Assembly: GCF_000150275.1 (NCBI RefSeq)
Contig: NW_002060947.1
Span: 4,206,335-4,270,334 of the forward strand
Origin: Trichoplax adhaerens
Taxonomy: Eukaryota; Animalia; Placozoa
Reading direction: 5' to 3'
DNA: 64,000 bases
This document shows positions 40,801-58,500 of the stretch, piece after piece. A model generated the notes under the pieces. The model was not told where the DNA came from, made no database searches, and saw only the letters and a program-made list of their open reading frames with translations. Within the stretch, counting starts at the first letter, position 1, and each line of letters begins with the position of its first letter. The position numbers were made by a program, and so were the translations under genes.

Positions 40801-42964
40801 GTACAATAACCATCCTGCAATACCGTATGTTTAAACAATTATTATTATACAATTTTAGCTTAATTAGGATTTTATCCACTTTTAACGCTTGTGTTTTTTC
40901 ATTACGCTATCTATGCACTAATTCAATTTATGCCCATTCGATAGCGTGCAACGGAAACTTCATATAGTTTACATTAACCTTTGTTATTACTATATATGTA
41001 AAAAGTAGGGTACATTTACCATTAGAACACCACTATGATGCCCGAATCAATCATTACGTTGTATAATAATTAAAAAAACATGCGGCAGCAGTAGCTATAA
41101 ATCGGATTGTGCAGAAGTTTGCACACACAAAGCTCCATTATAATATGATGATGATGATGACGATATATATATGTAAGACCTTTACAATTTTACTAAGCAG
41201 CTGCAGAAAGATGTCGATTGTGCAGGAGTTTGCACACGCAAAGCTCCACTATAATACGATGATGATGATTATATAAGACCTTTCTAATTCTAGTAAAATG
41301 TTCGAAACTAATTTTAATAAAAATTTTCCCTTCTATTTCATATGTCGTAGAACTTGAAGATCGTAATTTGCTAAGATAAGGTTAGCAAACAACCTTAATA
41401 TCTATTTGCAAGTAAAATTTTGATAGTCTTTCTAAACTGATAATAACGATATAAAGCTGTAAATTTCATTTCCAGTCAATAATTACTGTAAGTTGCAGTA
41501 CAATCAATTTGTTCCACTCTGATTCGTATGTATAAAAAATTTAGAGTAGGCTTGCAAATACAATAATTTCAGTATCAATTCGTAAGCAATTTAAGCATAA
41601 TTCTTTTAATCTAATAAAAACTTGTAGGACGAAATGAATTTGGGGAGAATATTTACCTCTGATATTTAGCTGTTTTTACTACATCGTTGATTGTATCTGA
41701 CTGTTCACCTTTATCCCCATCATCTGTAACATCAAATTAACCATATTTTTAACTCTTTAATAAAATATTACCTAGCAATTTAAGAAGTATACAGTACCTT
41801 GAGTTAGTATGCTTTCTTCTTCTATCGATAACGGTTGATTTTGCATATTAGATTGTTCTGATTCTTGCGCATACTTTTAACGATATAAATTCGAAAATAT
41901 ACTCAATAATTTACTAGTTGAAGGTTTTCTTCAAGTTTGTTCAATCAATTTTTTTAATTTAGAATTTAGTAATGGAATATCGATGATCTCATCATAATGA
42001 GTAACTCTCTTTGATAAATTAAGGAATAAATTTCATTATTTAGCTGATAAAAAGATCGACGAATATCGATAACTTAGCCATACACAATAGTATGATAGTG
42101 ATGCGAAGCTAATACAGAAATAGTAATTCTAACCATAAAGTCTATCATACGTACACTTACTAGACTTTGATGACGATAGTAATTAGATGAATAAATTAGC
42201 CGGCTATTAGCGCCCTATCCTAAATGAGATTCCCTTACCTCAATCGATTGATTTTTACGGCTCAAAGTTCTATTTAGCAAATCGAAATTATGATTATCTA
42301 CTACGCATTCTTCATCGCTACCGCTATCGATAATAACGATGGGAGGAGATAGTTTTGAAGTAGTTTCGTGGTGATACTTTAACGGGCTATGCAGTGATAC
42401 TTTGGAAGACCGACATCGATTAGGCGATGGATGTAATGTTTGGATAGTCATTTGATGATTATTATCACCATCGATTACAATCACTTGATTGGAAAGCGTG
42501 TGAGATTTTGTTGTCTTTTTGCTGTCCTTCTTTTTTCTCTGTAAGAGATGGTTGGAATTACTCTTACTTTTATGGTGTTGTTTAGACCATGCATGGGATT
42601 TTTCGGTAGTCAATTCAATCGTATTTTGATCAACTAAGTTAACATAACCCGAAGTTGAAGGCATCAATTCGCCTCTTGATTGATCAGTAATGTTTGCATC
42701 ATCTAGACATGGTAATGGATCGGTTAGTAAGTCTAATCCAGATGATCTTTGATGCTGATATTGGTACGGATGGAGTCGTTGATAATTTGTAGTGGCAAGC
42801 GATTGGCTCCAACTATCACCATGTTTTATCTTCTTACGCTCTTGACAGTAGAAGAATTCTTCTGCTGCATCATGTTTTTCCTCACCTTGATCAGTCCATT
42901 CCTCAATGGATTTCAATTTTGTACTCTCTACTTGACCCGGAGCAGGATTTTTACAGGGGTTCAT
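34764..42964 (-). CDS. PARP14/15-like macrodomain-WWE mono-ADP-ribosyltransferase, multi-exon; linkage of exons upstream of ~39130 is tentative
   Basis: Macrodomain: IKLVIGSIEKE|ADVIVNS...GAIATALHKAGG...|SIAIPMIGIG (38789-39130, 38460-38676, 38336 downward). A degenerate second macro (VNLYHGNI...SVSFPLI), a KH-like segment (IKIHGFEADILNAISAI) and a WWE domain (SWY...FDSKMNYDL...IDYENM) follow. Catalytic domain: VPPYWDEM...RIQNWNLYRRY...LLFHGT...GFDRDYSG (~36271-36596) and GTGTYFA...ARVLTG...IFVV...AYPEY (34764-35027). Low-complexity exon at 42238-42964. Confidence 0.85.
41085..41290. repeat. Short direct duplication (~115 bp spacing) with (GAT)n tract
   Basis: gattgtgcag.agtttgcacac.caaagctcca.tataata.gatgatgatga occurs at ~41105 and ~41216. 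Confidence 0.8.
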
Positions 42965-45282
42965 TGGGTCTGTAATAAAGAAAAATACTTGAATAATTAC
43001 CCTAAATCAATACTGGGCTACTTACTGGAAGGCAGATACAAGAGTACAAGTATAAGAGTACAATGTTAGTTAGCCAGCAGATCGAATGAACTTCATTTGC
43101 AGTACAGGACAGTATAATTAAATAATTATTTTTAATTTTTCTCAATGTGTCATAACAGAAACATATGAAAACTAGTATTTCATTAGTTTCGATCTCTATT
43201 TATTTTTTCCCCCTAAGGATTGTCTACCTTGGAAGAATGCGTCACCATGGTTATTTTTTTTTACCCCTCCCATAAATATGAAATATATAATGAGTTTACT
43301 TCCAGGATCGCGTTTTACTGCTACTTATATAGGTAAAATGTACTATGATTAGTTACAATCTAAACTATAACTATGCACATCGTAGGCTAGATTGCGTCAT
43401 GACTTGTTTTCCTTTCCTCATTTATATTTTGCTTGTACTTGCTTATTATGCTGTGCCTGTGGGTGCGATCTACCGCAAAGTACAAAATTATCCAGCTTTA
43501 CCCCTTGAATAACAGTAGTATCCATCCATAATGGATTCCATACTGATCGCGGTGTATCTTAAGTTATTTTAGGTTATCTAAAGTTACACAAGCTATAAAA
43601 GTGCACATCGTAAAGTGCGTAATTATAGCTAAGGCCTAACTACTTGTAGAAGCCAGTGGAAATTTATACAACTTAAATGCGTCAATAATTTTACTACGGT
43701 AGACCAGAGTTTGTAGTTGTAGAGCATTAGAACGGACCACAGAACACAATTCTGTAAAAGATTCGCAGGATTGTAGTCATTCCTAATAAATATCTTCATC
43801 CATTTTAATCCAGTTAAATGAAAATCTGAATACCCAGATTGCCCAGCCTACTCAGTATAGTATCATTCACTGAGATGCAAAGGAGTATCGAAATTTTATT
43901 GACACTTTAGTCATTGCCACCGTCCATTGACATTTATGATAAAAAAAGGCATTTGGTTAAGTACGGACAAAGAAGTTGAGAAGTCTCCTATATCCAAGAG
44001 TCCTCCGGCTATTAAAGGTAGCATTTGTTGTAACCAAATCTTAAGATTGTATACTATATGGACTTTTCACCGTTGCGCTTCTCTGCTTCTCACAATTCAC
44101 AATAATATCTAAAATGAATCTCACACATGAGCTGTATTGACATTAGCCTACCTAATTATGGGCTCCGTATTGAAGCTGAGTGCCAATGTAGCATTTTAGA
44201 ACGAGGATAAATTTGATAATGTTGACTCTCTCACGCAGCAGCTATGGTGTGTAGTTCAAGGGTTTCAGATATTATTTCCTATAGTACCTGCTTTTCGAAG
44301 TTAGTAAAATTTAAATCCTTCGTTACTCTCAAATTCCTCAATTATGCATTATAATTTCGTTTCCGAATAACGTTACTGTTATATATCTGAATCTTACACT
44401 TAGTTAATGTTAGTATATGTTCCCCACGAAAATACATAGCAGTTACAATCTTAATATATATGTATTTAGCGTATCATATGCATACCATTTGCAATATTAG
44501 AAATGGAATACTTAAAGAATATAATGGAAGTTAACGCAACTATAGATCATGTTATTGCTCTTTGATTAGATATCAACAGATAAAGTCTTGCGCCTTCATC
44601 TTTAACGTAAGCTGAAAACTAATTAATCCTTTTCAACATTAGGAGTGTGTCGAAGCTTAACTCTTGCAACCGTATAATATTCCAACAGTCAAGGCAATAA
44701 AAAACTTATAAGGTGGTAAAATTTTATAGAAATTTCTTTCCAGTTGCACTTTTCTTTAAATGCAATGCACTGACAGATAGGATTTCGACCTACTTTCAAT
44801 CCACTGGTTGAAATGATTTGGATAAATTCGTTCATTTTTATTAAGACATTAAAAAGACCACAATTATAGCTCGGCTATAATATCAGTATTCTGTTATCAA
44901 TAAAACGCTCATTTTTCATGACTATTAACAAATACCTTTGCTACAGTAGGCTTCTTTTAAATAAAAATGCTAACATTTCACGAGTAACAACAAATACACA
45001 TGTTATTAGTACAATATTATAAATAAAAATACTTCAATTTGCATTATTATTTACAAATAGGCATGTTGTTGCATAAAGCTTTAAAAATGAAAATGCTTCA
45101 ATGTCACCATTTTTAAGGTTAACAGATAGATAGAATAGATCATGAAAGAGTATCATCATATGTATCATACATTATTTCTATTTTGTAGTATTGCGGTTAA
45201 TAGCAATTTAAATAAATAGTAGCCAGGAAAAGAGAAATTCCACACCACTAGGGTGGACATGCCCTAATAAAAATATGACTAT

Positions 45283-48200
45283 TTACAATATATTACAACA
45301 TTGGCTAACATGAGGATTAGACGTTGTCCTTGTACGTGGCAATGCAGAAAATAGCGCATCTTCAAAAATTGAAGATCCTATCGAAATATTGTCATATGGA
45401 TGGAAACGAATATGATTTCCAGAATGACCACCACCATTAATATTGTGATGATTGGTATTATTATGATCAGCATTAGTGCTGGAATAATGATTACTATTAT
45501 TATTAGGATTAGGCGAAAGATTATTCGTGGAATCATTTTGATTATCTAGTGAATTGCCGGATGTTATTTGTTCATCGCTCAGTTTAACATATTTATTGAT
45601 TCGTTCAATAATCTCCGAAAATTTCTCGCGTGGCGATAGATTTCTACCTTTACCTCCATGACCACCACCTTGGCCGCTCATATCGATGTAAATAAGTTGA
45701 GAAAAGCTAATAGCCATTGCACCTGGTGGTGGCCAATCGACCTTTTCCAACATGACAGGCACAATCGGCTTACCTAACATATCAGCTAAAATAATCTCTT
45801 TACTACAACTACTAGAAGAGACATACTTGGAGGTTACACATGCAATCACTAATTGGGCCTCTTTGATACCGTCGTAAATTTTTTGATATAGAATATCACC
45901 GCCACCCATTTGACCAATATCAATCCAACATTTATAGCCATACCTTCCTAATCGACTACATAAGGCTTTAGCTTCAGCTTGATGGTCCCATTGATAGCTG
46001 ATAAAAATTTCTGGTGAGGGTGTATCGGAGCGGACAATGTTGTTATTATTACTGTCTGAATTTTGAACGATACCTTATGATTGAAATTGAGCGTAAAAAA
46101 ATAATTGTAAGCTTATTTAATGGTATTGATACACTCTTAATATTCCTTCCAAATCAGTTTCAATCATTTAGTTAACGATCACAATACAGCTATCAAACAG
46201 AAGTCAACCTATACATTTATTTCGTGTTCGTTGTAATTGAAATAGAACATGAACTAAAATTCTAACATGACTGATTTCTTATTAGTATATACTCTATTAT
46301 AGCATACCTTTATTAATCTCAATTTCCTGCATTATGTGCATAACATCGTCGCGTTGTATTGACTGCAATATTTGATATAAATCATCGATGGTATTACTTT
46401 TACTCCAATCATTCAATATTGCATGTGCAGGATCTGCTGTTAAACTCCAATTACATATATCGATCTCACTATAGCCCATTTTTCGAGCCAATGTGCGCCA
46501 ATTAGCTTTACCAGGTAAAGTTAATAAATCGGTAACTTCATGGGGCCATTCAAATTCTTGTTCATTCTATCAATTTATTAATACATATGTTAGCTACTAG
46601 TTCTAATATGGAAGTCAATGAATGATAGTTTAATTATTTTAGATTTTTTCCAACATATACGAACTACATCATTAATTGTATCTATATCAAGACTTTAGTC
46701 ACTATAAATAGGTATAAAATAAATACCTTGCTACTGGACTTAATTAAGGATCCTAAGCTTTTCTTGTCTAGATTAAACACGGTAATAAAAAAAGCAATAG
46801 AAATTTAGTTATTACAAAATAGTGCCGGTATATTAATGATTGTATATTGATTAGCACTTATGTACGTCGATATCTAAAGATTTTAACTCTCAGTGGTCAA
46901 TATAGAACAACCTTTTTTAACTTCAGGACAAAACCACTTTTTATATGGTGCTGTACGAATTCTTCTATGATCACAGAGGACCAGCTAAAAAAATGCAATT
47001 TTTATGACCGTTTGATGACATATGTATAAAGATCTCTTCAATATTATATAAAATTCTTATGAATATAATCAAAAAGATGACCGTAGGCACAGCGTATTGA
47101 TTTATGGTTTAATTGATAATATTCCGAAGTAATAATCTCTTTTAAAGTGCAAAATAAAAATTTGTCATTAGTACTAAGCTAACCTTTGCAGACTTGCAGA
47201 GTTCTAATTCATGAAAATGCAAACACTCTTCTCTTTGACAACCATTAATGTTATGTTTTTCACATAACTTGTTGCATGTACAGGCTACAACAATTTGATA
47301 ATTAAGGTGACGGATCCAGGCTTTACGCAAGTTAGCCAATGTCGCTTTAACAAACTGCAAAACCTGTAAATAAAGTATTTAAATAAGAACTGTATATATT
47401 TCGGTGTTAATACTATTTACAGAGACTAATATATTTGCCAATCTTTTAATGAAATCATACCTTTGTACATGCTTGTCTATTTACTTCAATAACAACTCCT
47501 TCTTCCTCATCATCGAAGTTTGCTCGTTGGACAACAACCTATTAGTAAGGGTGTCATACAGGGTATCATTTATAGGTTAGGATTTACTTCTTATTTATAG
47601 TGAGCCAGACTGTAACAACAAAAGCATCTATTGTAGCCATTAACTGGTACATTACAAAACTATTAACCTTTATTCGTGCAAATCGCATAGGTGCTCGATG
47701 TAGTATAAAATCATGATCTTCATCTAAATAAAATCGAGCACAGTTATTATATAAATAAGGCTCTCGACCACCACATTCTTGTGTCCATCTAACGACATGC
47801 ATTAATAAGCGATTATAAAATCCATCTGGCAGAAATCCGTCAAAGTCAACATAGAACGATATATCCCAGTTATTATGAATGTAGATATCTTCAATCCTCT
47901 TGGGATTTTGCAACCGTGATGGTAAATAATACGTATTTCCACATTCCGCATAATCAGTACAATCAGATGATCCCTATAAAATAAGAATAAATTTAAAAAT
48001 AAGATAGTAAATAAAAGATGACTGACATTTAGGTAGAAATTGATAAAACAGCTAATGAAAGATAGTTATTTATTTTCTTAGGTGCTATAGTGAATTTGTT
48101 GGACCTTTCGGGGAATTAATCGACGACATAGCAGATCAAACGATTCCATTAAATTTAGTAACATTGATTTATGATCGATGATATCACCCCACATATAATT

Positions 48201-51200
48201 GATTAAATCGTCAGTCAATATTCCTCGTTTATTAAGTAATTCTAATGAATTCGATTTCATGGAAAACTGAAATAAGATAAGAACAAATTTCAAAATAGAT
48301 ATTTATAAGCTTTAAAGTTTCATCATTACTAAACAATTGAGTTTATGTTCGTTAACTAATAGTCAAAAATATGATTACATTTTATCCGTAATTATACCAA
48401 TCATGTACTAACGTTATTGCCTATGTTTTTCAAAGTTAAAATTTTAACAAAAGAATCAGCCAACCATAACGGATCAAGAATAACAGTAATATTGTTGGAT
48501 GTATTCCCGACTGAATCTTGATAGTGTACAATATTGCCAAGATCGTGATAGTATTGTAACATGACTTTAATAGCAGATCGATCGATAATATGCGATTCCG
48601 ATGCAATTAACTGATAAACCTAATAATACATAATAATTTTTAGTATGAAAAAGATTAGTGCGCAAAGATAATATCATCCGTATCACAAAATGAATAATGT
48701 TATTGTAGTAATGAAAATATGCTATAGATATGGTACAGTATTTGTCAATGCAAGAGTAAAAAAATGTGACAGCACTGGTAAATCGAGTTACAGTACAATA
48801 TTATTTATGTATCTATTGAATTTAAAAACTATTCAAATGGCTATTTATATAACCTTAAAATAATTATTATCAATCGATAATTATTGTTTGATTGTTATAT
48901 TTCTTTTACGCAATTAAAACTATGTTCAGTCTAGTCTTATTAGTTAATCAATACTAAATTTAATTATACTTATTAAACGCTCACTGAACTGACATAAATA
49001 TTCTTATTCCAAGAAATACTACCTTATCGTCTAGACAATAAACCTATTTACTTATTTATTTATTAATTTGTCCGCAGAAACGGTGTCAATAACCATACAC
49101 AATTCAGCTATAAGTCGATTTTAATCATGAGCTTAATTGCTTTAGCACTGACCTCATCGGATGATATTAAATGCTTTCCTTCTTTCGTCATTTGTCGAGA
49201 TAGGCATTCAAATTTTAGCCACTGGATCGGTATCTTTTCACTGATAAAAGGTTGTGATTCTACAGCATTGTCGATGCTTTGAATAAGTTTGGCCAACTAC
49301 ATAATATCATAAAAAAGAAATCTTATTTAAATTCTTTCCATGACATTAAATCCACTGTTCTCATCAAAAAATAAAATAAATCTATTAAATTGCGAACATT
49401 TTTTTACTTACCTCCTCGTCTTGATCATCATCTAATTGATCATCAATTGCAAAAAATATTGGGGCCATATGCCTAGCGTAAGGTTTACCCCGTAGGTTTT
49501 CCTGTATCCTATCAAATCTATAGTTTATTAATTTGTTACGTTCCTAATAGGAAGCAAAGAATTGTCGTTAGAAAGAGCTTATATTCTATCATATCTCAAT
49601 GGCCTTTACATTAATAATAATACAATCAAAAATTTTAAATATGCTCTTAATTTTTTATTGTTGGAGGTTAGCTATTATTTACCCGAATATAAACAAAATA
49701 ATATTACATACATTTTTCGACTTACTGTGATATTACTACCAAGTTTATTCTTGTTAATGCCAATGATAAATACGGTAGGTGTTAGAAGAGTAGCTTTACG
49801 ACTGGGGTTTTGACCAACAGCGCAAGAGTAAATGGAGCTCATCCAGTATAAAATAAAATCCAGTACACATAATTCATTTCCCTCCTATCAAAAAATTTAT
49901 AATTTGAGTTAAACTTCATATGCATTCACTTAAAGTTTTTTGTGTCAGGGACTACTAAAAGAAGTAGTCTCTGTTAGTATGGATATATAATTAAATAAAA
50001 AATAAATTAAAAGTAAATTGTTCACTACGAATGTCGATTCTAATTAGTACAATTGTAAAACGACTAAAGTTTAATTTTAGACACTATACCGATTCTTCAA
50101 TATCTTCGGTTAAATCGAAAGCGATGATATAGATTGATTTATTGTTGCAAAACATCTACATTATCCAGATAATAATAAAATGGAAATTAATAGCTAATAA
50201 GGGGAAATTTCTGATTTAGAGTGAACGATTAAATATAGGAAGTGCAACGATGGTTTCAAAAGTTTGGCGATCGCAATTAACTTACACGATAAGATAAATT
50301 GTGTATAGGTTGTCCACTTAAATCCCAGACATCATGAGTTTTTAAGATCTCCTCATTGGGCTTAACTTCGATATTATTTTTTTCATGATTATCAATATCA
50401 CAATTTTCAATCATTTTGCATACAATTTGTTTCATTGTAGGGGCTAAGCTGTTTAATATTGCTTCATGCTGTTGACTAGCTTGCAGGGTCGAATCGGAAG
50501 TTTGTAATTCCTTCGACAAATGCCAGCTAGGAGAATAACTTGGTTCATCTTCAATATCACAAATATCATGATCGTCAATATAACGATCTTCGTCATTGAC
50601 ATTCATATTAGATTCATCAATATCTTGATTATCGATTATACTTTCTAATTTGGTAACAATGCTTTTAGCTAATGCTTGATCTAGTTGTTCTTGAATTTTT
50701 TCCATTTCATCTATTTTAATTGACAATAAAATCATAATTGAGAATGTACTATAGATGAATTTCGCTATACCGCATATTTAAACAACGAAAGGGGCAAGAC
50801 TTCTGAGTGTCAATACTGCATCATCATTTTAGGTATTGATTATAGCTATTTTACATCTTTATTTATAACAGCATGATAGGTTACCTTCTATGGTGGAAAA
50901 CGAATATTTCTTATCCAAAGCATCTTTTCCGCCTTCTTCTACTAAAGGACTTAAATTACCTTGACCTAAAGTATCAAAATTGTTCATTGCGAAAATTTTA
51001 AAAACAAACGAATTAATTACAATAAATATTTAGTAGATTTAACAGTTCCATGTACTTTATAACTTTTAAGCTACTTGTACAGAGAAATAACGTAGTTATA
51101 AATATGATGTAGATATGTATTACCTTTCAGGATTTTACTAATTGTTTGTCGGGGAAGCTGATCTTTACTTAAGATTACAAAGCGAATTCGACGAACATTT

Positions 51201-54200
51201 CGACAATCAAACTGTGAAGCTTTATTATATGCTGCAATAGCATCTTTACCATGTGCTAAAATTTCCGGTGGAACTTATGGTTTGACAGAAGAGCGAGAAT
51301 GATACAAATCAGAAAATTGGATAATATAGATTTTGATCAATGTCTATGTAGTTCTATAGCAGGGAATATTTCAAGAAAAAGCTTGCATTTCTTGAGTAGT
51401 CCCTGTTTAAAGTACTATCAAGCAAATAAAACTTTAGTCTATTCGAACAGTACCAAATACGATATTAAAGAAAGTAATGAACATTTATGGTAAACTTCTA
51501 TCCGTGCACGTTTGATAGGGAATAAAAGATCTTTAAATAATATCGCAGATGTTTATTGTAATAAAAAAGATACTACCGGTAATTGTTGCAAAGACATTAT
51601 TCGCTAGGCGTTTCTTTATTTCATTTACATTTAATCTAATAATTTACATTATAGTTTCAACCTATATCTAAGGAAAACCTCTATTACGATCGTTAACCAT
51701 ATCTCTGGTTTGGATTAACTTACTATTTTCATTCCCTTCCGGCACGATGGTAGCACAATCACAGTTACCATACAAATTAATAATGCCATAGACGTTATTA
51801 GTAACATCCGTAGCTATCGCACCTAGAAAGACAAAATAAGCAGTATCGTTGGAAAATGCATTAAAAGTGTAAAGTAGTTCATAGTTATATTTAATTAATT
51901 TGTCAACTCGGATTTTTCAGCGGCACCATAGTTAATCAAGTACATAAACTATTTCTCTGTCCTAACTGTTACTCTAATTAATAATTATCAATCGGTATTT
52001 TGCTTTAGATAGATACAATCTCCAGTATAAGTACGCCATATTTAATTTGAGTTATACCTATACTATAACAAATTAGTAAGGTATGATGTTTCATAGCAAC
52101 AGCTACTTAACTCATCAATCAATATTTACTTCCGATAAGCAATATTATTAGGTCAAGTTAATAAGCTTCGCGTGAATATTATCATGTGCAGCTACTACAT
52201 ATTGAATTGTAATAATTGCCAAATGTTGTACGAGAATTTTCGATTTGATTTAGTAATAGAGTGTTAACGTGTTTACTATTCGCTTTGTAAATTATACTTT
52301 TATAACGATTCCTCATTAAAAATTTCTAATTTACCAGAACTTTATGATAAATGTAATCATAAAGTTACGTTCTGAAATATATCTCAAATGCCACATGAAC
52401 GTAAAATAATTTATGCCATCTCAGTCCCCACTACCGTAAGTTATGCTTTAACGTACGATAAATATAGATTATTTCATAAATGTGAGAAATTAACCTAAGT
52501 CATTGCCATTAATGTACGCATGAACATGACCATTTGTCTTTCGACTAATACCAAAATAATCGCCCATCTTCAAAGAATGCAATCCTTGATGATGGCAGTA
52601 ATTTTGACATTGACCATGGACATAAAGATTTTTATCGCTGAGAATCCAATTTGGAGATTGTTGTATTCCTACTAAAGAGCGGGGGAATTGTAAACTGGTT
52701 GGTGATGCAGTTGTTAAACCAATTTGTAAGTTCCCATTCCATCTTGTCATAACATTGTCAATTCTTAACTGAAATAATTCATTATCTTGTAAAGGACGAT
52801 TTGTCATAAAAGTAGCAGCATCGAATTGACTGACTGCATTTTTACGGCTAGCAATCGTAAAATCGGACGATAACATGCCATTTAATCCATGTCTAGAATA
52901 AAAAAGTAAAGGAGTTCGGGGATTCGAAGCTGAAAGTAAAAATAAAGGCAAATAGATATTAAGAGAAAGGCGATAATCAGTCAATATTAATCTCTTTTTT
53001 AGCTTCATTGATATTTACCATTTCACAATATTGCTATTACTACAGATTCCTTTTACATTTAAAGTTTACGGAGAAGTTGTAGCAATCAAGTATTAGAATA
53101 TTCTAACGTATAAAATTTATTAGAAGAAAGATTTACCTGCAGGCTGTTCTCCAAGATAGTCTATCCTTACTTTACAATCGCCAATAATTGTTGATATCAT
53201 AGGATAAAGAATTTTTCCTTGTAGTCCGTGAAAGGCAATCCCTAGGTTAACACCATTAACTTCGTAAGATAAAGTTCCTCTATCCATATCTAAGATAACG
53301 CAAAATTTCTTAAATCTAGATAATTCTTGATTTAATATGTTACTGCCATCTTCGCCATCTTGATTCTGGTTATGCAAATGATTAAGCATCGGGTAATGGC
53401 CTTGTTCAATATTTGCATGTATTAATACTCTTTTGCTGATATTCCATCCCCAACTATTAGTACTACAACCAATTAGGCTGGTATAGCCTGTACAATGCAG
53501 ACACTCTTTCTTGTTACCAACACCGGCAACGGAATGAGATCCTAAAAATATAGGTATAAAATCATACATAGGATCAATTAAAAATTCATCCCAATAATTA
53601 AGAGCAATTTCTGTTTGAAACTGAATTACTTGATTAGTTAATAAATTAAAACTTTAACTATATTACTTTAGCATTTCCTTAAGCAATATTAATCATGATC
53701 AATCTATGGTCGTTATATCAAAATGATTCAATATATCTTAGAACTACTCTATACCAGAGCCGATAGTAAATAGGCCACTCTTGATTCAAAATTGATCAAC
53801 AAAATAGATTCACAGTAACATGAACTAGCAACATTATTGAAAGACAAGGACTGAAGTAAAAATTTATATGTATGGTATGTTTTATAAAGAGAAAAGATTA
53901 CATGATAAATAGTGATACTATGTTTATTTGATATCATCAAATAGAGATTTGCGACCATTTCTCAAGAATAATTCATCAATTCCACTATGTTCATTACATG
54001 TTTAATATATGGTATTAAAATGACTAGACTTTAGAAGACTCGATTTACGTATGTGCATGCTGATCATTGATTAATAAATGACTGAAACAGATTTGAAAAT
54101 CGAAGCCTTAAATTACAGCAATCATAAAATGTAATTTATCATCGCCATTAGCAGAAAGAAACGAAGTACAAAATGACAGTAGTGTTAACATAACAAATGG

Positions 54201-55583
54201 ATTTACCATAGCAAAATACACATTACTCGTATAATGATGCATGCAATGGTTAATAATTTACGAAAGATAACGTATGTAAATTAACGTTTTCGTATATGGA
54301 GTATGACTGATTCATAATTATTATCACAACAGACTTAATCTATTGATTGTGATATCGGGTATGCTATATGTATTGCCTAGAAAGATTGAAACTAACTACT
54401 ATGATTCGTTAATTCAAATTTAGTAGCAGTAATTTACAGTGATACCACTCCAACACGTTTTCGGGATAGGGATAATTACGTTCAAAACTGAACTTGATAA
54501 TAAAGCTATTCAGGATCAAATAGAGGACGCAGATGACATAAAATCTATTTTTAAGATAGAACTCAGCAAGAAATTAACGGAAAAGATACTAACCTAAATC
54601 TCCTTGCCATGTTAATTGCCAAACATGTCTACCATTCTCTATGCTTCGATTACATCGAATAGCATCAGTTGATTGGACTGCTTTCTGCCTCTGACAAGCA
54701 TGAAGATCATCGTCCAGAACATGAATATTAACTGAACAATCATCTGGATTCCATGTATATAGATTGGCCATTTCTTGACCTGGCCGACGGTTGCCTGATG
54801 ATCAATAATTTGAGTAAATTATGAGGATAGAATATCTTCATGAATTAATGTCCTTACTAAACGACATACTATATGAATTATTATTAGCTTAATCAAAGCT
54901 ATCCTGAAATAACAGGATAGTTCATAATGCTTTAGGATTACTTTGTTAAATACTTATTTAAGGTTACCAAGAATGACAGTAAACTTACCAAGATAAATGA
55001 TTGAAACTTCTGCATTGCCATAGACTTCGCTAACCATTGGATAAAGAGATTTTCCAACTAGCCCAGTACAACAGATACCAAGATATTTACCCTCAGCTTC
55101 AAATGCTAATGTTCCATTTTCCATATCCAGATAGACTATAACTTCACTCGGTGCTTGGTAATCAAGAGCCATAGACGGATAGCAAGTTAATGATTTCTTT
55201 CCTGCACTATAGCTAATCTTGTTAGTAATATCCCAGCCCCAAGCGTTAGGGTCTTGCTCAATTAATGTTGTGTAACCTTTACAATGTAGTATGGCTTCTT
55301 TTGAGCCAACACCTGCTACTGCATGGCTACCTCGTGGAGTTAACCATTTTAATTTCCAAGCATGATGGCCATGAGTATAGCCATATCTACCTCTAATAGC
55401 ATCGGTTGATCGACGAGCTGGCCTTCGATAAAAGGTTAATGGGTCATCGTCTTTAATGTAAATATTTTTGGAATGATCTGCGGGATGCCAAGAATGAATA
55501 ATTTCCTGATTGAGTTCATTTTTACAAATCGAGTCGTGTTTATCACCATGGCGGACGACATGATCACGACTAGTTGTTACCAT
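45283..55583 (-). CDS. Roco-family multidomain protein: SPRY-SPRY-NHR(neuralized)-Roc(degenerate)-COR-Death-TIR, ~19 exons
   Basis: SPSB-type SPRY1 (54989-55583; HSW...STDAIRG...GSHAVAGV...LDMENGTL...LYPMVSEVYG). SPRY2 (54594-54796 plus 53138-53541). NHR (52496-52929 plus ~51724-51822; FMTNRPL...LRIDNVMTRWNGNLQIG...VYGIINLYG). Roc (51124-51273 PPEILAHGKDAIAAY; WDLSGQ ~50310; IYIIAFDLT ~50120; YWMSSI...VFIIG ~49765-49850). COR (KIPIQWLKFE; YYHDLGNIVHY...ILDPLWL; YYLPSRL; FLPDGFYNRLL). Death domain (~46305-46566 NWRTLARKMGYS...LQSIQRDDV). TIR (45283-46073 IFISYQWD...CWIDIGQMGGGD...CSKEIILA...IVPV). Splice phases are consistent at most junctions checked; the one near 51640-51720 is ambiguous. 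Confidence 0.82.
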
Positions 55584-58500
55584 CTTTCTTTTTTCTCCTT
55601 GGAATAATATAAAAGTAATCTTTACTTTAAGTTGGCTTAATAACAGTTGGGTAGCTAGAGCTAAATTTTAATGAAGGAAAAAGTAACGAATAAATTTATA
55701 GCTATAATATATGCCAACATTACGGGAAGAAAAGTTATAACTTCGATAATGACACATATAGGTGTACAGCAGTAGTCCGGAGTCATAAAATTAAAGAAAT
55801 TTGCTAAAGAAAGGGTGAGGTAATAACTGCCATTTTCACCTTCCTTTTAGTAAATCATTATCTTATAAATGCCCAATTTTCGGCTACTGTACGTTAAATG
55901 TCACTTTAATAGACTTTAATAAAAATGAAGGATAAACTCATTAAGTGACCTAATAAATATTATTAAAATAAACCAATTATAGAAATGAAAGAAAAGCTTC
56001 TAAACAGTCTTATGAAAACAATTTTATAAGGAGAATTTTAATAAATCATTAAAAATGGAAAATAAGACCTGAAATTAATTTAAATTTTTCCTGCTTATTG
56101 GATTATAAACATGGTTGAATAATATTCCCGTACTACTTATTTTTCAATATGCATATTAAAATTCATATTAATAAACGATAACAAAACTTATCGATCATGA
56201 ATATAAAGTACGTATATAAATCTTGGGGTATTTTCGAAGGATATTAGGGAGAATTTAAAGAGGGATCAATAACGAGATTTTTCTCACATACGTATAGTAT
56301 AGTGCACGGTACAATTGTCTATTGTATCTCTATCCATAAAAATGTCAACTATATTATTGTATATGGTCTTTAGATTCTTTACTGAAGTTAAATTCAATGA
56401 TTCATAGCACAGGATTTAACTATGTTAAGGCAAATGAAAGATTCTTCGGTATAAAATAAAAATGTTCAATTCTCGAGTACCGGTAGCTTAAATCTTCAAT
56501 CGGTTTTATGCCTCTATTATTAGAGTCATAATTTCTTTAGATTATTCTTACTGTGAGTATAGGAAATTACTTAAATTAATTGAATAATTTCAACTAGAAA
56601 AAGCTTTTCTTTTTTTTCTCGATCTAAACTTTAGATAGATCTATGCAAAAATTTCTACTGCGTTGCTACTAACTGCTACGGGATAAGCTTTATATGATCT
56701 TTAATAGAATTTCATCGCTTCCTTAAAAGATGCCTATTTCGTTTATCTTCAATACATATTTGCTTCATACCACCTTCATATATAGAATACTTTTGATTAT
56801 AAATAAATGATTAGTAATTTTACCGTCAATTCTCGACAAACTTTACGGGTAATTTATCAAAGATTTACTGCAGGACAGTCTTTAGTGTTGTGGGGGTCTA
56901 GAAAAGGAGTTATTATAAATACCCTTTAAAATAGTGTGATAAGCTGCTTAAATTTATCGACAAATAAACCTAAAGTCAGATTTTTATTAATAATGTTAAT
57001 AAAAAAAATTTTACAAACGATATAACAACCAAAACTTTTGCAGTTAGTGTTATAATTTCGACAAAACCTTTATGACTCTAGTAAGAGAAGTAGTAGTATT
57101 TAATTAATAGAAGCTCCGCTGTACAGTATATTTCACGTCCTACACATATACGTGTATCATACTTATTATGGATAACTTTTGCAAGTATGTTTATTTTGAA
57201 GAGGATCACATTAACTTGAGAAGATATGAAGTTCTCTTAAGTAAGCTGACAAATGTCTAAAATTCAACATCCGTTTGCAAAAATAACTGAAAAGCTATCC
57301 TTATTAGTTTTAAAACGCACAAGTACGGTATAATACGTATTAAGATTAAGGTATCGTTTTAATGCTAGTCTATATAACGCCTATTAATATAACATCAGCA
57401 TTGATCAACTAGAATATTACGTTAATATTTTTCTTACCTCTTTAGAAAAAAGCGGGGTTTTAAGGCAAGCTGTTATCGAAAAATATTCTAGTTGGATTCG
57501 ATAAATAATGTTTTTTGCTGTATTTGATCTAAGCCTCTAAGATTAGAAAATGATACCAAAATTACTCGCTAAGTCACTGAATTTTTCTAACGAAATGATA
57601 GGTCCTTCACTTTAAAGTAATAGTATTTATTATACAATTAAAAATATCAATGTTTCTATGTTGTTATATGCGATTTTAAGGGTTTGAGCATAAAGTTGTA
57701 ACAAACATTAGGATGGATTGTTACCTTTTTTAGTGTAATGCATAGAATTTATACATACTACAACCTACCGTAGGTAAGTTTATTAAACTTATTTCAATTG
57801 GCCATTTTTAAGGTTTAAAGTAATGTTGATGCTAACGAATAACCATGGAAAAGAGCTTTAATGAACGATTTTAATAGTAAATTTAGCTTGTTTAAAAGTC
57901 CAATGACTCTTTAAATGTTAATGTAAGGCCCCATCGCATAAGCTATAGTAATATTGATAGAATTTTAAGTCAACAAGCATTTCTAATCGAAGCAAATTTC
58001 GATGTAATATTGTAGATAGTTATTAGGTAGATGTAATTGCCTTGGTAAAAGTTATGTGATACTTGCTGTATTCGCAGGGAACGTAAAATGAACGAGATAA
58101 TAAGAATAAACATTCAGTAGTACTTTACCTTAGTAGTTTAGTTGTTAGAATATGGCAGCGCAGAGACAAGAGTCAACAAATAATTGTTGTATCAAGTAAT
58201 CATGCAATATACAGTAAAGATAAACCGATCCGGAGAAAATAGGAAGGAAATAATGACAGCTCGTAAAGAAGTAAAATAAAATTTTACAAGAAAATTTATA
58301 TATATCTGCAAATTAAGATATGGAATAGCGTCAAAAAAGAATGTATATAATTTAATATGGCAGATGGCTTCCCGACATATTCGACATGTCTACGCAATGG
58401 CTTAAAAATTGAATACTACCTTAGTCCTTTACAATTTTAGCTGTATGGGACAACAGTCTAGTACAACTACTAAATATGATAATATCTAGTTAACTACTTC

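What the first reader, a model, noticed from the sequence alone, without database searches (positions are those of the whole stretch)
45283..55583. SPRY-SPRY-NHR-Roc-COR-Death-TIR: a candidate all-in-one innate immune or cell-death receptor
Seen: collinear, same-strand exons giving two SPSB/Gustavus-type SPRY domains, a neuralized homology repeat, a Roc-COR tandem, a Cys/His-rich segment, a death domain and a C-terminal TIR, with no intervening terminal exon or SOCS box. Known: vertebrate Roco proteins (LRRK1/2, DAPK1, MFHAS1) lack this combination, SPRY and NHR are peptide-recognition modules, Roc-COR dimerises, and Death and TIR domains polymerise in immune signalling. Inference: a sensor-switch-effector layout analogous to NLR/STAND receptors but built on Roc-COR. 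Related invertebrate proteins may exist in databases, but I know of no functional description.
Basis: partly seen in the sequence, partly recalled or inferred. Interest (0 to 1): 0.88.

Follow-up and report, generated by a model that had tools for sequence, protein, structure and literature searches.

The report
Placozoan SPRY-NHR-Roco-Death-TIR signalling gene
This is one real, expressed 1,662-residue gene that adds two peptide-binding SPRY modules to an old, unstudied invertebrate protein family combining a Roco core with a death domain and a SARM1-like TIR domain; it probably acts as a membrane-tethered cell-death or immune signalling device.

Summary
Window 45283-55583 (minus strand) holds one gene: 21 coding exons, all GT-AG, 4,989 nt, 1,662 aa, plus a 5'UTR exon ending at 57438.

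- **One transcript:** spliced RNA contigs from three studies join SPRY1>SPRY2>NHR>Roc.
- **Domains, tool-verified:** two SPSB1/4-type SPRY domains with no SOCS box, one NHR, Roc, COR-A/B with a Cys/His elaboration, Death and TIR_2.
- **Family:** it is the single-copy counterpart of a conserved, uncharacterised bilaterian family, NHR-Roc-COR-Death-TIR (about 1,250 aa; amphioxus, hemichordates, echinoderms, molluscs, annelids and others). That family is already in databases and is catalogued in an Aplysia immunome paper. No listed member carries SPRY.

New here:
- The Roc P-loop is lost (SKDQLPRQ), while 20 of 20 orthologs keep GxxxxGKT.
- The TIR is closest to SARM1 and bacterial NADase TIRs, and the catalytic Glu is invariant.
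- The family ends in a CaaL prenylation box (CNIL here).

My reading is a membrane-anchored, ligand-gated Death/TIR hub with probable NADase output. Its GTP switch is probably dead in this species. Single-copy status and strong conservation argue against a diversifying, NLR-like pathogen receptor. Function is inferred, not shown.

Verdict: new variant of a known kind; interest 0.55.

The parts
57438..57538 (-). 5' UTR exon. The 3' end is at 57438 and the donor GT at 57437-57436. The 5' limit is approximate, because at least about 100 nt are seen in RNA.
   Evidence: Loose ends of the X6 and X4 contigs at 55662 match the genomic sequence that ends at 57438 and is followed by gtaaga. This exon carries an in-frame TAA, so ATG 55583 is the start codon.
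54989..55660 (-). Exon with the rest of the 5' UTR, the start codon (55583-55581) and SPRY1, an SPSB1/4/Gustavus-type SPRY domain encoded entirely in this exon.
   Evidence: Pfam SPRY 2.9e-10. PDB SPSB4 2.6e-49, SPSB1 1.1e-48, Gustavus 1.2e-44. RNA joint 54988>54793.
53137..54794 (-). SPRY2 in two exons (54594-54794 and 53137-53541) separated by a 1,052-nt intron. It is followed directly by the NHR exon, with no SOCS box.
   Evidence: Pfam SPRY 1.6e-6. PDB SPSB4 3.1e-22. About 40-53% identical to SPRY1. RNA joints 54593>53540 and 53137>52929.
51724..52929 (-). Neuralized homology repeat in two exons (52495-52929 and 51724-51822).
   Evidence: Pfam Neuralized 1.3e-23. The nearest solved relative is the NEURL4 (KIAA1787) NHR, 5.6e-16. 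RNA joints 52493>51820 and 51724>51273.
49412..51273 (-). Roc-homologous region in six exons: 51124-51273, 50885-50965, 50286-50710, 50090-50155, 49726-49884 and 49412-49543. It includes an acidic insert of roughly 100 or more residues between switch I and switch II.
   Evidence: The exons align collinearly to ortholog profile positions 157-538. Pfam Roc hits the orthologs but no window exon. RNA joints run through 50089>49883, and the X4 loose end confirms 49726>49543.
51146..51169 (-). The P-loop (Walker A) position of Roc. It reads SKDQLPRQ where the orthologs have GQDRVGKT.
   Evidence: 20 of 20 orthologs keep GxxxxGKT. No other Walker-A-encoding frame lies in the Roc region; the only GK[ST] strings in 45000-58000 lie in SPRY-coding or intronic sequence. 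The RNA contigs list no difference at these positions.
50310..50324 (-). Switch II DxxGQ motif, retained as DLSGQ.
48105..49296 (-). COR-A in three exons (49153-49296, 48413-48619 and 48105-48266).
   Evidence: Pfam COR-A 3.9e-10 (40.2 bits, cut-off 35.3) and 0.015. Ortholog profile positions 537-709.
46912..47973 (-). COR-B (47668-47973 and 47461-47538) with its conserved Cys/His elaboration (47184-47363 and 46912-46984).
   Evidence: Ortholog profile E=5.8e-38 and 7.7e-19. The AF2 model of the same region in the Haliotis ortholog has pLDDT 90.8 and best matches the C. tepidum Roco COR, LRRK1 and LRRK2. The Cys/His pattern is conserved in most orthologs.
46727..46767 (-). 41-nt linker micro-exon. 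It is placed by splice sites and reading frame only.
   Evidence: GT-AG borders and the frame is kept. There is no RNA evidence here, because it lies outside the laid stretch.
46308..46566 (-). Death domain exon.
   Evidence: Pfam Death 2.7e-13. Nearest solved structures are the p75NTR death domain (3e-5) and the MyD88 death domain (3e-3).
45283..46073 (-). Last exon. It holds the Death-TIR linker (with DSNNNN at 46039-46056), the TIR_2 domain, a variable Asn-rich tail, a conserved C-terminal block, the CaaX box CNIL (45286-45297) and the stop codon (45283-45285).
   Evidence: Pfam TIR_2 1.2e-23. Ortholog profile 3.2e-77. Placozoan-like homologs P0253 and P0254 keep the TIR, the linker and the ...HVSQCCNIL ending. 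32 of 33 bilaterian orthologs end in C-x-x-L.
45796..45798 (-). Codon of the TIR glutamate (residue about 1492 in my model numbering). It aligns with the catalytic Glu642 of SARM1.
   Evidence: HMMER alignment to the SARM1 TIR. The residue is invariant in the 20 orthologs and in alignment A2. The Cat1 alignment pairs it with the E of Cat1's CwdEL stretch.

Best explanation
The locus is a single expressed gene encoding a 1,662-aa cytosolic multidomain protein. The domain order is SPRY(SPSB-type) x2, NHR, Roc (P-loop lost, acidic insert), COR-A/COR-B with a Cys/His elaboration, Death, TIR (SARM1-like, catalytic Glu kept), an Asn-rich tail, and a CaaL prenylation box.

It is the single-copy counterpart, in what is probably the placozoan Trichoplax, of a conserved but uncharacterised invertebrate family, NHR-Roc-COR-Death-TIR-CaaL. 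It carries two lineage-specific changes: an N-terminal tandem of SPSB1/4-type SPRY domains without a SOCS box, and loss of the Roc Walker-A motif.

Proposed mechanism (inferred):
- The geranylgeranyl-type C-terminus tethers the TIR end to a membrane.
- The SPRY and NHR beta-sandwich modules bind short peptide motifs of one or more ligands, more likely conserved or endogenous proteins than variable pathogen molecules.
- Ligand engagement is transmitted through the Roc-COR scaffold, which here acts as a structural or dimerising pseudo-GTPase rather than a GTP timer.
- This drives clustering of the Death and TIR domains.
- The clustered TIR signals by NAD+ cleavage, as in SARM1, and/or by recruiting Death- or TIR-containing partners, giving a cell-death or stress/immune output.

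Shown: gene structure, splicing, domain identities, orthology, motif states.
Inferred: prenylation, loss of GTP binding, NADase activity, ligand gating, biological role.
For: One gene:
- 21 GT-AG coding exons keep the frame with no stop.
- Spliced contigs from X6 (on record as RNA), X4 and X7 remove nine introns from SPRY1 to Roc. A 5,145-nt X4 contig is long enough for the 5' UTR plus the 4,989-nt CDS.
- The 5' UTR exon carries an in-frame stop.

Domains.

Orthology:
- The exons map collinearly onto profile positions 2-1230 of 20 bilaterian proteins.
- The best matches of the amphioxus protein in this genome are this locus.
- There is no paralog for the SPRY1, NHR or TIR exons.

Family architecture. 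No precomputed Pfam list among the listed members contains SPRY.

P-loop loss. DxxGQ is retained.

TIR type:
- The SARM1 TIR is the best sequence hit, with the Glu aligned to E642.
- The profile search ranks Cat1, AbTIR, PdTIR and SARM1 at 1e-8 to 1e-6 against MyD88 at 0.3.
- The AF2 model (pLDDT 77) best matches the SARM1 TIR and the SPARTA TIR.
- The Glu is invariant.

CaaL box: the window ends in CNIL, and 32 of 33 bilaterian orthologs end in CxxL with a second Cys upstream. It is kept in placozoan-like homologs.

COR-B and the Cys/His segment fold as a Roco COR domain.

Established knowledge, from memory: SARM1 E642 is catalytic; CaaX with X=L directs geranylgeranylation (RhoA, RhoB); the P-loop Lys and Ser/Thr are needed for nucleotide and Mg binding in Ras-like GTPases.
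Against: - No biochemical or genetic data exist for any member of the family (literature).
- A conserved catalytic Glu is necessary but not sufficient for NADase activity.
- Pfam's Roc model does not hit the window exons, so Roc rests on homology to orthologs.
- RNA evidence was laid only on 49700-55690. Continuity of exons 12-21 rests on frame, ortholog collinearity and contig length.
- The CaaX a1 residue is Asn, which is unusual though tolerated.
- The ligand(s) are unknown.
- Nothing shows whether the role is immune, developmental or metabolic.
- The species name is my inference from assembly size and contig count, not a tool result.
Confidence: 0.6

Rival explanations
1. It is a MyD88-like scaffold adaptor of a Toll/IL-1-type pathway. 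Death and TIR serve only as homotypic interaction modules that bridge an upstream TIR or SEFIR receptor to Death-domain kinases. There is no enzymatic TIR activity. SPRY and NHR only localise or regulate the adaptor.
For: The Death-then-TIR order is the same as in MyD88. The MyD88 death domain is among the nearest solved death domains (3e-3). The Aplysia immunome paper files the mollusc ortholog under MyD88-like proteins (PMC9334734). Kamm et al. suggest that placozoan TIR-domain proteins may act as alternative adaptors (PMC6321704).
Against: The TIR profile matches enzymatic TIRs (Cat1, AbTIR, SARM1) five to seven orders of magnitude better than MyD88 (E=0.3). The SARM1-type Glu is invariant from the placozoan to amphioxus. 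Placozoans lack canonical TLRs and death-domain IRAKs (PMC6321704).
Confidence: 0.22
2. It is a pathogen-sensing, NLR-analogous innate immune receptor. SPRY and NHR directly recognise variable non-self ligands, Roc-COR works as a nucleotide switch, and Death/TIR execute.
For: The sensor-core-effector layout is there. The genome holds at least 49 COR-A loci, many joined to death-fold domains (earlier notes; Civiero 2014). Relatives in other phyla swap in other sensor-like modules: a RIG-I-like helicase in P0200 and a Macro domain in P0134.
Against: The gene is single-copy here, and the database listings show mostly one locus per species (impression not counted). The TIR and COR-B are strongly conserved. 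That is the opposite of expanded, diversifying receptor families. The P-loop is destroyed, so a nucleotide switch is unlikely in this species. SPSB-type SPRY and NHR domains classically bind conserved endogenous motifs (from memory).
Confidence: 0.13
3. There are two genes: an SPRY-SPRY gene ending at the in-frame stop just after 53123, and a separate NHR-Roc-COR-Death-TIR gene starting at ATG 53008, as in bilaterian orthologs that begin with the NHR.
For: Without splicing, the SPRY2 reading frame runs into a stop 5 codons past the donor. An ATG lies 39 codons upstream of the NHR. In the orthologs scanned that have an NHR, it starts at residue 2-7 (P0130: residue 30).
Against: Spliced contigs in three runs from three studies join 53137 to 52929 with GT..AG ends, and single contigs also span SPRY1, NHR and Roc. 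The ATG at 53008 lies in the polypyrimidine tract of that intron.
Confidence: 0.03

Closest known systems
Uncharacterised bilaterian NHR-Roc-COR-Death-TIR proteins, for example 'neuralized PATS1' of Saccoglossus kowalevskii (P0087), Branchiostoma LOC109482588 (P0002) and Haliotis LOC124147603 (P0093). The Aplysia ortholog is catalogued as a ROCO-type MyD88-like protein.
   Same: The match is collinear from NHR to TIR. They share the acidic insert in Roc, the Cys/His elaboration of COR-B, the invariant TIR Glu, the GGHGG motif after the TIR and the C-terminal CxxL box. It is the reciprocal best match in this genome.
   Different: The window protein has about 420 extra N-terminal residues forming two SPSB-type SPRY domains (none seen among the listed family members). 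It has lost the Walker-A P-loop, and GTH[RK] is replaced by GINK.
SARM1 (NAD+ hydrolase; ARM-SAM-SAM-TIR)
   Same: The TIR domain is its nearest solved relative by sequence and by fold, with the catalytic Glu642 position conserved. In both, a regulatory N-terminal region precedes an oligomerising module and a C-terminal TIR.
   Different: There are no ARM or SAM domains. Oligomerisation would have to come from Roc-COR and/or Death. The protein has a C-terminal prenylation box, whereas SARM1 has an N-terminal mitochondrial targeting sequence (the SARM1 detail is from memory). NADase activity is untested.
SPSB1/SPSB4/Gustavus (SPRY plus SOCS-box substrate receptors of Cullin5 E3 ligases)
   Same: Both SPRY domains are clearly of this subtype (2.6e-49 and 3.1e-22). 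SPRY1 keeps most residues that I recall as contacting [DE][IL]NNN peptides: Arg, Pro, Tyr and the Val-x-Gly loop, with Trp changed to Tyr.
   Different: There is no SOCS box, so no Elongin B/C-Cullin5 recruitment is expected. The domains are tandem and fused to a Roco protein. The only stand-alone SPRY plus SOCS-box gene that this scan found in the genome is SPSB3-like.
Roco proteins with death domains (DAPK1; invertebrate Roc-COR-Death proteins; the Trichoplax ROCO expansion described by Civiero et al. 2014)
   Same: A Roc-COR tandem followed by a death-fold domain. The COR-B of the family folds like the C. tepidum Roco, LRRK1 and LRRK2 COR.
   Different: No kinase, LRR or ankyrin repeats. 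The gene has many exons, unlike most of the other COR-A loci in this genome, which lie in long open frames of about 700 aa without stops. Its Roc lacks the P-loop.
The LRRK2-NEURL4 interaction (Imai et al. 2015, PMC4565672)
   Same: The NHR here is closest to a NEURL4 NHR. NEURL4 is reported to bind the ROC domain of LRRK2 (abstract). An NHR-Roc partnership therefore exists in trans in mammals and in cis here.
   Different: This is only an analogy. No test of NHR-Roc contact was made here.

Membership tests
NHR-Roc-COR-Death-TIR family (uncharacterised; 'neuralized PATS1'-like) | Full-length collinear similarity from NHR to TIR | tested here: met
   Profile of 20 orthologs against the exon pieces: hits in order from profile position 2 to 1230. 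The TIR exon scores 3.2e-77 and COR-B 5.8e-38.
NHR-Roc-COR-Death-TIR family (uncharacterised; 'neuralized PATS1'-like) | Reciprocal best match and single copy | tested here: met
   The best own-genome hits of amphioxus P0002 are the window's TIR and COR-B exons. The window's NHR, TIR and SPRY1 exons have no close paralog.
NHR-Roc-COR-Death-TIR family (uncharacterised; 'neuralized PATS1'-like) | C-terminal Cys-x-x-Leu box with an upstream Cys | tested here: met
   The window ends ...SQCCNIL. 32 of 33 bilaterian orthologs end in CxxL.
NHR-Roc-COR-Death-TIR family (uncharacterised; 'neuralized PATS1'-like) | NHR at the extreme N-terminus | tested here: not met
   In the orthologs scanned that have an NHR, it starts at residue 2-7 (P0130: residue 30). 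Here two SPRY domains precede it, joined by RNA-supported splicing. This is a variant architecture.
Roco proteins | Roc GTPase domain directly followed by COR | tested here: met
   COR-A is above the Pfam cut-off. The Roc region is homologous to ortholog Roc domains that do pass Pfam Roc. The family's COR-B folds as Roco COR. Pfam Roc itself gives no hit on the window exons.
Roco proteins | Canonical nucleotide-binding motifs: G1 GxxxxGK[ST] and switch II DxxG | tested here: not met
   G1 reads SKDQLPRQ. DxxGQ is kept as DLSGQ. The G4-equivalent GTH[RK] reads GINK. No alternative Walker-A exon exists. Actual GTP binding cannot be tested with these tools.
SPSB (SPRY plus SOCS box) family | SPSB-type SPRY domain | tested here: met
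   SPSB4, SPSB1 and Gustavus at 1e-49 to 1e-44 for SPRY1 and about 1e-22 for SPRY2.
SPSB (SPRY plus SOCS box) family | C-terminal SOCS box | tested here: not met
   SPRY1 is spliced to SPRY2 and SPRY2 to the NHR with no intervening sequence. The own-genome SOCS_box scan has no match in the window. It is therefore not an SPSB family member.
SARM1 / enzymatic (NADase) TIR domains | TIR fold with the conserved catalytic glutamate | tested here: met
   The Glu aligns to SARM1 E642 and is invariant in orthologs. The profile prefers NADase TIRs over MyD88. Foldseek's top hits are the SARM1 TIR.
SARM1 / enzymatic (NADase) TIR domains | NAD+ hydrolase or cyclase activity | not testable with these tools
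   This needs an enzyme assay.
SARM1 orthologs | ARM repeats and tandem SAM domains N-terminal to the TIR | tested here: not met
   The Pfam scans of all exons show no ARM or SAM.
NLR / STAND receptors | NACHT or NB-ARC STAND ATPase core | tested here: not met
   No such domain appears in any exon. The resemblance is architectural only.
CaaX-prenylated proteins | C-terminal Cys-a-a-X, with X=Leu for GGTase-I | tested here: met
   CNIL is followed by the stop codon. The motif is present, but prenylation itself cannot be tested here.

The most novel reading that the evidence does not exclude
The whole NHR-Roco-Death-TIR-CaaL family would be a second, SARM1-independent, membrane-anchored NAD+-cleaving death or stress switch of animals. 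It would be conserved from placozoans to amphioxus and lost in vertebrates, insects and nematodes.

In the placozoan the GTP switch would have been replaced by captured SPSB-type SPRY modules. These may hold the enzyme off by binding the conserved DS[NH]NNN linker just upstream of the TIR, until a competing ligand releases it.
Probability: 0.15. Interest if true: 0.85.

Novelty: new variant of a known kind. Interest (0 to 1): 0.55.

Why it matters
TIR domains that destroy NAD+ are executioners in bacterial anti-phage defence, plant immunity and animal axon degeneration. In animals only SARM1 has been studied.

This locus anchors, in one of the simplest animals, a deeply conserved single-copy family. 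That family couples a SARM1-like TIR and a death domain to a Roco core and a lipid anchor, and nothing is known about its function.

The placozoan version is a natural experiment. Its GTPase P-loop is dead and it has gained two SPSB-type peptide readers. It could therefore show how Roco scaffolds (the LRRK2 family) control an output domain without nucleotide cycling, and what ligands gate such a device.

The concrete handles are the Glu codon, the P-loop-equivalent residues, the CaaX cysteines and the SPRY grooves. They make the hypothesis directly testable with ordinary assays.

Tried and rejected
- **Complex prediction, SPRY1 exon against the first 30 residues of the last exon (DSNNNN linker):** 'no answer', score 0.01. 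This is not evidence either way.
- **[DE]xNxN motif count:** three matches in 1,653 residues, against about 1.2 that I estimate by chance. The linker motif is not statistically remarkable on its own. In P0253 and P0254 the Asp sits one residue further from the NNN, which weakens a strict SPSB-ligand match.
- **Search for a public full-length model of this placozoan protein:** two full-length searches found none (P0002 with the whole region, and a mixed alignment with exon rows). The single-exon search found only exon-sized relatives at 77-82% identity from ENA and Logan contigs. Given the tool's word and length filters, this blank proves nothing.
- **Pfam Roc and Pfam COR-B on the window exons:** no hit. 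The domains are accepted on ortholog and structural evidence instead.
- **Kamm 2019 Figure S1 (TIR proteins of Trichoplax sp. H2):** held only as an image, so I could not check whether this gene is drawn there. Gerdol 2017 (ecTIR-DC families) is not in the library.
- **The search of earlier findings near the place:** nothing.
I redid it with coordinates only.
- **Exons were never joined.** All searches were exon by exon, by reference. Protein length and residue numbers come from coordinate arithmetic.

Full report
**Scope and method**

The window is G000:C1410:4206335-4270334 of a 105.6-Mb, 1,414-contig, AT-rich assembly with short introns. From memory, those figures fit the placozoan Trichoplax adhaerens; no tool named the organism. 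All protein searches were done exon by exon, by reference. I never joined the exons into one sequence. Length, reading phases and residue numbers come from coordinates only.

**Is it there?**

Yes. Stop-to-stop pieces on the minus strand between 45286 and 55667 give these Pfam hits:
- SPRY: 2.9e-10
- SPRY: 1.6e-6
- Neuralized: 1.3e-23
- COR-A: 3.9e-10, above the cut-off, plus a second piece at 0.015
- Death: 2.7e-13
- TIR_2: 1.2e-23

Pfam's Roc model hits nothing in the window.

**Is it one gene?**

Reading the sequence and checking by coordinates gives 21 coding exons. All have AG/GT borders, all phases are compatible and there is no internal stop. The CDS is 4,989 nt, or 1,662 aa, from ATG 55583 to TAA 45283-45285.

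Contigs of four public runs were laid on 49700-55690. X6 is recorded as RNA. X4 and X7 are evidently RNA, because their contigs lack the introns. X6, X4 and X7 (three studies) show the same nine joints, all GT..AG on the minus strand:
- 54988>54793
- 54593>53540
- 53137>52929 (SPRY2 to NHR)
- 52493>51820
- 51724>51273 (NHR to Roc)
- 51122>50963
- 50885>50710
- 50286>50155
- 50089>49883

The fourth run, X8, gave only unspliced pieces and looks like DNA.

One X4 contig of 5,145 nt carries all nine joints, and its loose end beyond 49725 reads the start of the next exon (49543). Its length fits the 5' UTR plus the 4,989-nt CDS plus a short 3' UTR. Continuity through exons 12-21 is therefore likely, but I did not observe it directly.

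The loose ends at 55662 match a 5' UTR exon that ends at 57438 and is followed by gtaaga. That exon has an in-frame TAA two codons before the junction, so Met-55583 is the start. This disposes of the two-gene alternative (stop after SPRY2, restart at ATG 53008): that ATG lies in the polypyrimidine tract of a spliced intron.

**What are the parts?**

- **SPRY1 and SPRY2.** SPRY1 occupies one exon and SPRY2 two. Both are of the SPSB1/SPSB4/Gustavus subtype (2.6e-49 and 3.1e-22 to solved structures), and they are about 40-53% identical to each other. No SOCS box follows either one.
- **A separate SPSB gene.** The only stand-alone SPRY plus SOCS-box gene that this scan found is SPSB3-like, at G000:C1413:9545041-9545652. 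As far as this scan shows, the SPSB1/4-type SPRY exists in this genome only inside this gene.
- **NHR.** It is closest to a NEURL4 repeat (5.6e-16).
- **Death domain.** It is closest to p75NTR and MyD88.
- **TIR.** Its best solved sequence relative is the SARM1 TIR. The alignment puts the window's K-E-I on SARM1 K641-E642-I643. I checked the numbering against G601, K597 and W638 in the same alignment; the identity of E642 as catalytic is from memory.
- **TIR profile search.** A profile of seven family TIRs ranks Cat1, AbTIR, PdTIR, a Hydra TRR-2 TIR and SARM1 at 4e-8 to 2e-6. TLRs score about 1e-2 and MyD88 0.3.
- **TIR model.** An AlphaFold2 model of the window's TIR (pLDDT 76.8) best matches SARM1 TIR structures, then the SPARTA TIR-APAZ, plant RPS4 and Cat1.

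**Relatives**

The COR-B exon, searched against 1.84 billion representatives, found about 1,250-aa proteins. Their Pfam architecture is Neuralized-Roc-COR-A-Death-TIR_2, with the NHR starting at residue 3.

A word-indexed search with the amphioxus member listed about 47 near-full-length members. They come from cephalochordates, hemichordates ('neuralized PATS1'), echinoderms, molluscs, annelids, nemerteans, a priapulid, a centipede, a barnacle and a flatworm. None has SPRY in its precomputed Pfam list. The cnidarian hits have other layouts, such as kinase-Death-Roc-COR-TIR.

A profile of 20 members maps onto the window's exons in order from position 2 to 1230. The amphioxus protein's best hits in this genome are this locus. 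The NHR, TIR and SPRY1 exons have no close paralog. The gene is therefore the single-copy counterpart of that family.

Exon-sized homologs at 77-82% identity from environmental and Logan contigs (P0253, P0254), presumably other placozoans, keep the TIR about 98-100% identical. The Asn-rich tail, by contrast, varies freely.

**What differs here?**

1. **Two extra domains.** The two SPRY domains are an N-terminal addition not seen in any listed relative.
2. **A lost P-loop.** All 20 aligned orthologs have GxxxxGKT. The window has SKDQLPRQ (51146-51169). The RNA contigs covering that exon show no difference there. No other Walker-A-encoding frame lies in the Roc region; the only GK[ST] strings in 45000-58000 lie in SPRY-coding or intronic sequence.
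3. **Other Roc motifs.** Switch II DxxGQ is kept (DLSGQ). The family's GTH[RK] is GINK here.

The other Roc exons remain recognisably conserved, and the gene is spliced and has an open frame. This looks like a pseudo-GTPase, not a pseudogene. Loss of nucleotide binding is an inference.

- **A prenylation box.** The protein ends ...HVSQCCNIL. 32 of 33 bilaterian members end ...KCxxCxxL (CVIL, CTIL, CAIL and similar), and the placozoan-like homologs keep it. This is a CaaX box with X=Leu and an extra upstream Cys, as in RhoB (from memory). It predicts geranylgeranylation and membrane anchoring of the TIR end.
- **A Roc insert.** All members carry a charged, low-complexity insert of roughly 100 or more residues between switch I and switch II of Roc.
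- **The Cys/His segment belongs to COR-B.** It is part of a compact COR-B module. A model of that region in the Haliotis ortholog (pLDDT 90.8) matches the C. tepidum Roco COR, LRRK1 and LRRK2. Amphioxus and hemichordates have a 12-13-residue deletion that removes about four of the Cys/His positions.
- **An invariant motif.** A GGHGG motif follows the TIR in all members.

**How it probably works (inference)**

- The lipidated C-terminus places the Death-TIR end on a membrane.
- The SPRY and NHR beta-sandwiches bind short peptide motifs.
- The Roc-COR body transmits or scaffolds. In bilaterians this is plausibly under GTP control; in the placozoan it is not.
- Clustering of Death and TIR then signals, most likely through Glu-dependent NAD+ cleavage as in SARM1, and/or by recruiting Death- or TIR-containing partners.

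Single-copy status and very strong conservation of the TIR and COR-B argue for a conserved ligand and role.

The report that the LRRK2 ROC domain binds the NHR protein NEURL4 (PMC4565672) makes an intramolecular NHR-Roc contact worth testing.

A conserved DS[NH]NNN stretch in the Death-TIR linker resembles the [DE][IL]NNN ligands of SPSB SPRY domains. The match is imperfect, it is not statistically unusual, and the complex prediction gave no answer. I keep it only as a speculation.

**What is already known**

- Civiero et al. 2014 (PMC4104024) reported at least 17 ROCO genes in T. adhaerens, with TIR among the domains.
- Kamm et al. 2019 (PMC6321704) counted 16 TIR proteins in Trichoplax sp. 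H2. Eight belong to conserved 'ecTIR-DC' families with no known function.
- The Aplysia immunome study (PMC9334734) draws NHR/ROC/COR/Death/TIR proteins and lists one as a ROCO-type MyD88-like adaptor.
- I found no functional study of any member.
- Two earlier notes of this scan describe other Roco-death-fold loci in the same genome. That is consistent with the at least 49 COR-A matches.

**Verdict**

- Novelty: a new variant (SPRY x2 fusion, dead P-loop) of a known but unstudied family.
- Interest is moderate to good (0.55). The core architecture is already in databases. The SARM1-like TIR, the lipid anchor and the natural P-loop loss nevertheless make it a tractable entry into an unexplored animal TIR system.

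Noticed in passing
G000 genome-wide, e.g. G000:C1372:8262-8747, C1397:1152495-1152980, C1392:14373-38210: At least 49 COR-A matches in this genome. Most lie in long open frames (about 700-800 aa) without stops, and several are clustered on the same contigs. This is a large expansion of Roco genes that look intronless, in contrast to the 21-exon gene studied here.
   Followed up: partly
L001:925-1668 (+) = G000:C1413:9544924-9545667: A stand-alone SPRY plus SOCS-box gene in one open frame. It is closest to SPSB3 (1.1e-35). It is the only SPRY plus SOCS-box gene the scan found, so the SPSB1/4-type SPRY seems to exist here only inside the Roco fusion.
   Followed up: yes
window 10979-13402 (-) and 36794-43006 (-): Large open frames (435, 324, 514, 148, 183 and 263 aa) with no Pfam match at E<=0.001. 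They are probably exons of neighbouring genes of unknown family.
   Followed up: partly
window 20523-20987 (+): An exon with a Tmp39 (putative transmembrane protein) Pfam match, 1.5e-10.
   Followed up: no
P0200, P0134, P0136 (Amphiura filiformis and Antedon mediterranea proteins): Echinoderm relatives join the Roc-COR-Death core to other modules. P0200 has RIG-I-like helicase, CARD_2 and RIG-I C-terminal domains. P0134 has Death-TIR-Macro-Roc-COR. This suggests that the input and output modules around this Roco core are exchangeable.
   Followed up: partly
P0002:855-946, P0084, P0086, P0087: Amphioxus and hemichordate orthologs carry a 12-13-residue deletion that removes about four of the conserved Cys/His positions in the COR-B elaboration. 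Echinoderms, protostomes and the placozoan keep them.
   Followed up: no
window 45298-45420 (-), and P0253/P0254: A block just before the CaaX box (…YDNISIGSSIFEDALFSALP…) is nearly invariant among the placozoan-like sequences, although the Asn-rich tail before it varies freely. Gastropod orthologs have a loosely similar SEPSMDVLLSRISES block. It may be a short linear motif or an amphipathic helix.
   Followed up: no
window 51306-51627, 51807-52026, 54229-54516 (table 8): Low-depth unspliced contigs (depth about 2.6, against about 29 for the spliced contig) cover introns in the same runs. They are either pre-mRNA or traces of DNA. Run X8 gives only unspliced pieces and looks like DNA.
   Followed up: no
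P0150, P0152, P0143 (cnidarian proteins and Logan contigs): The nearest cnidarian relatives have kinase, Death, Roc-COR, TIR and SH3 domains rather than an NHR. The searches turned up no NHR-bearing ortholog from cnidarians, sponges or ctenophores.
   Followed up: no
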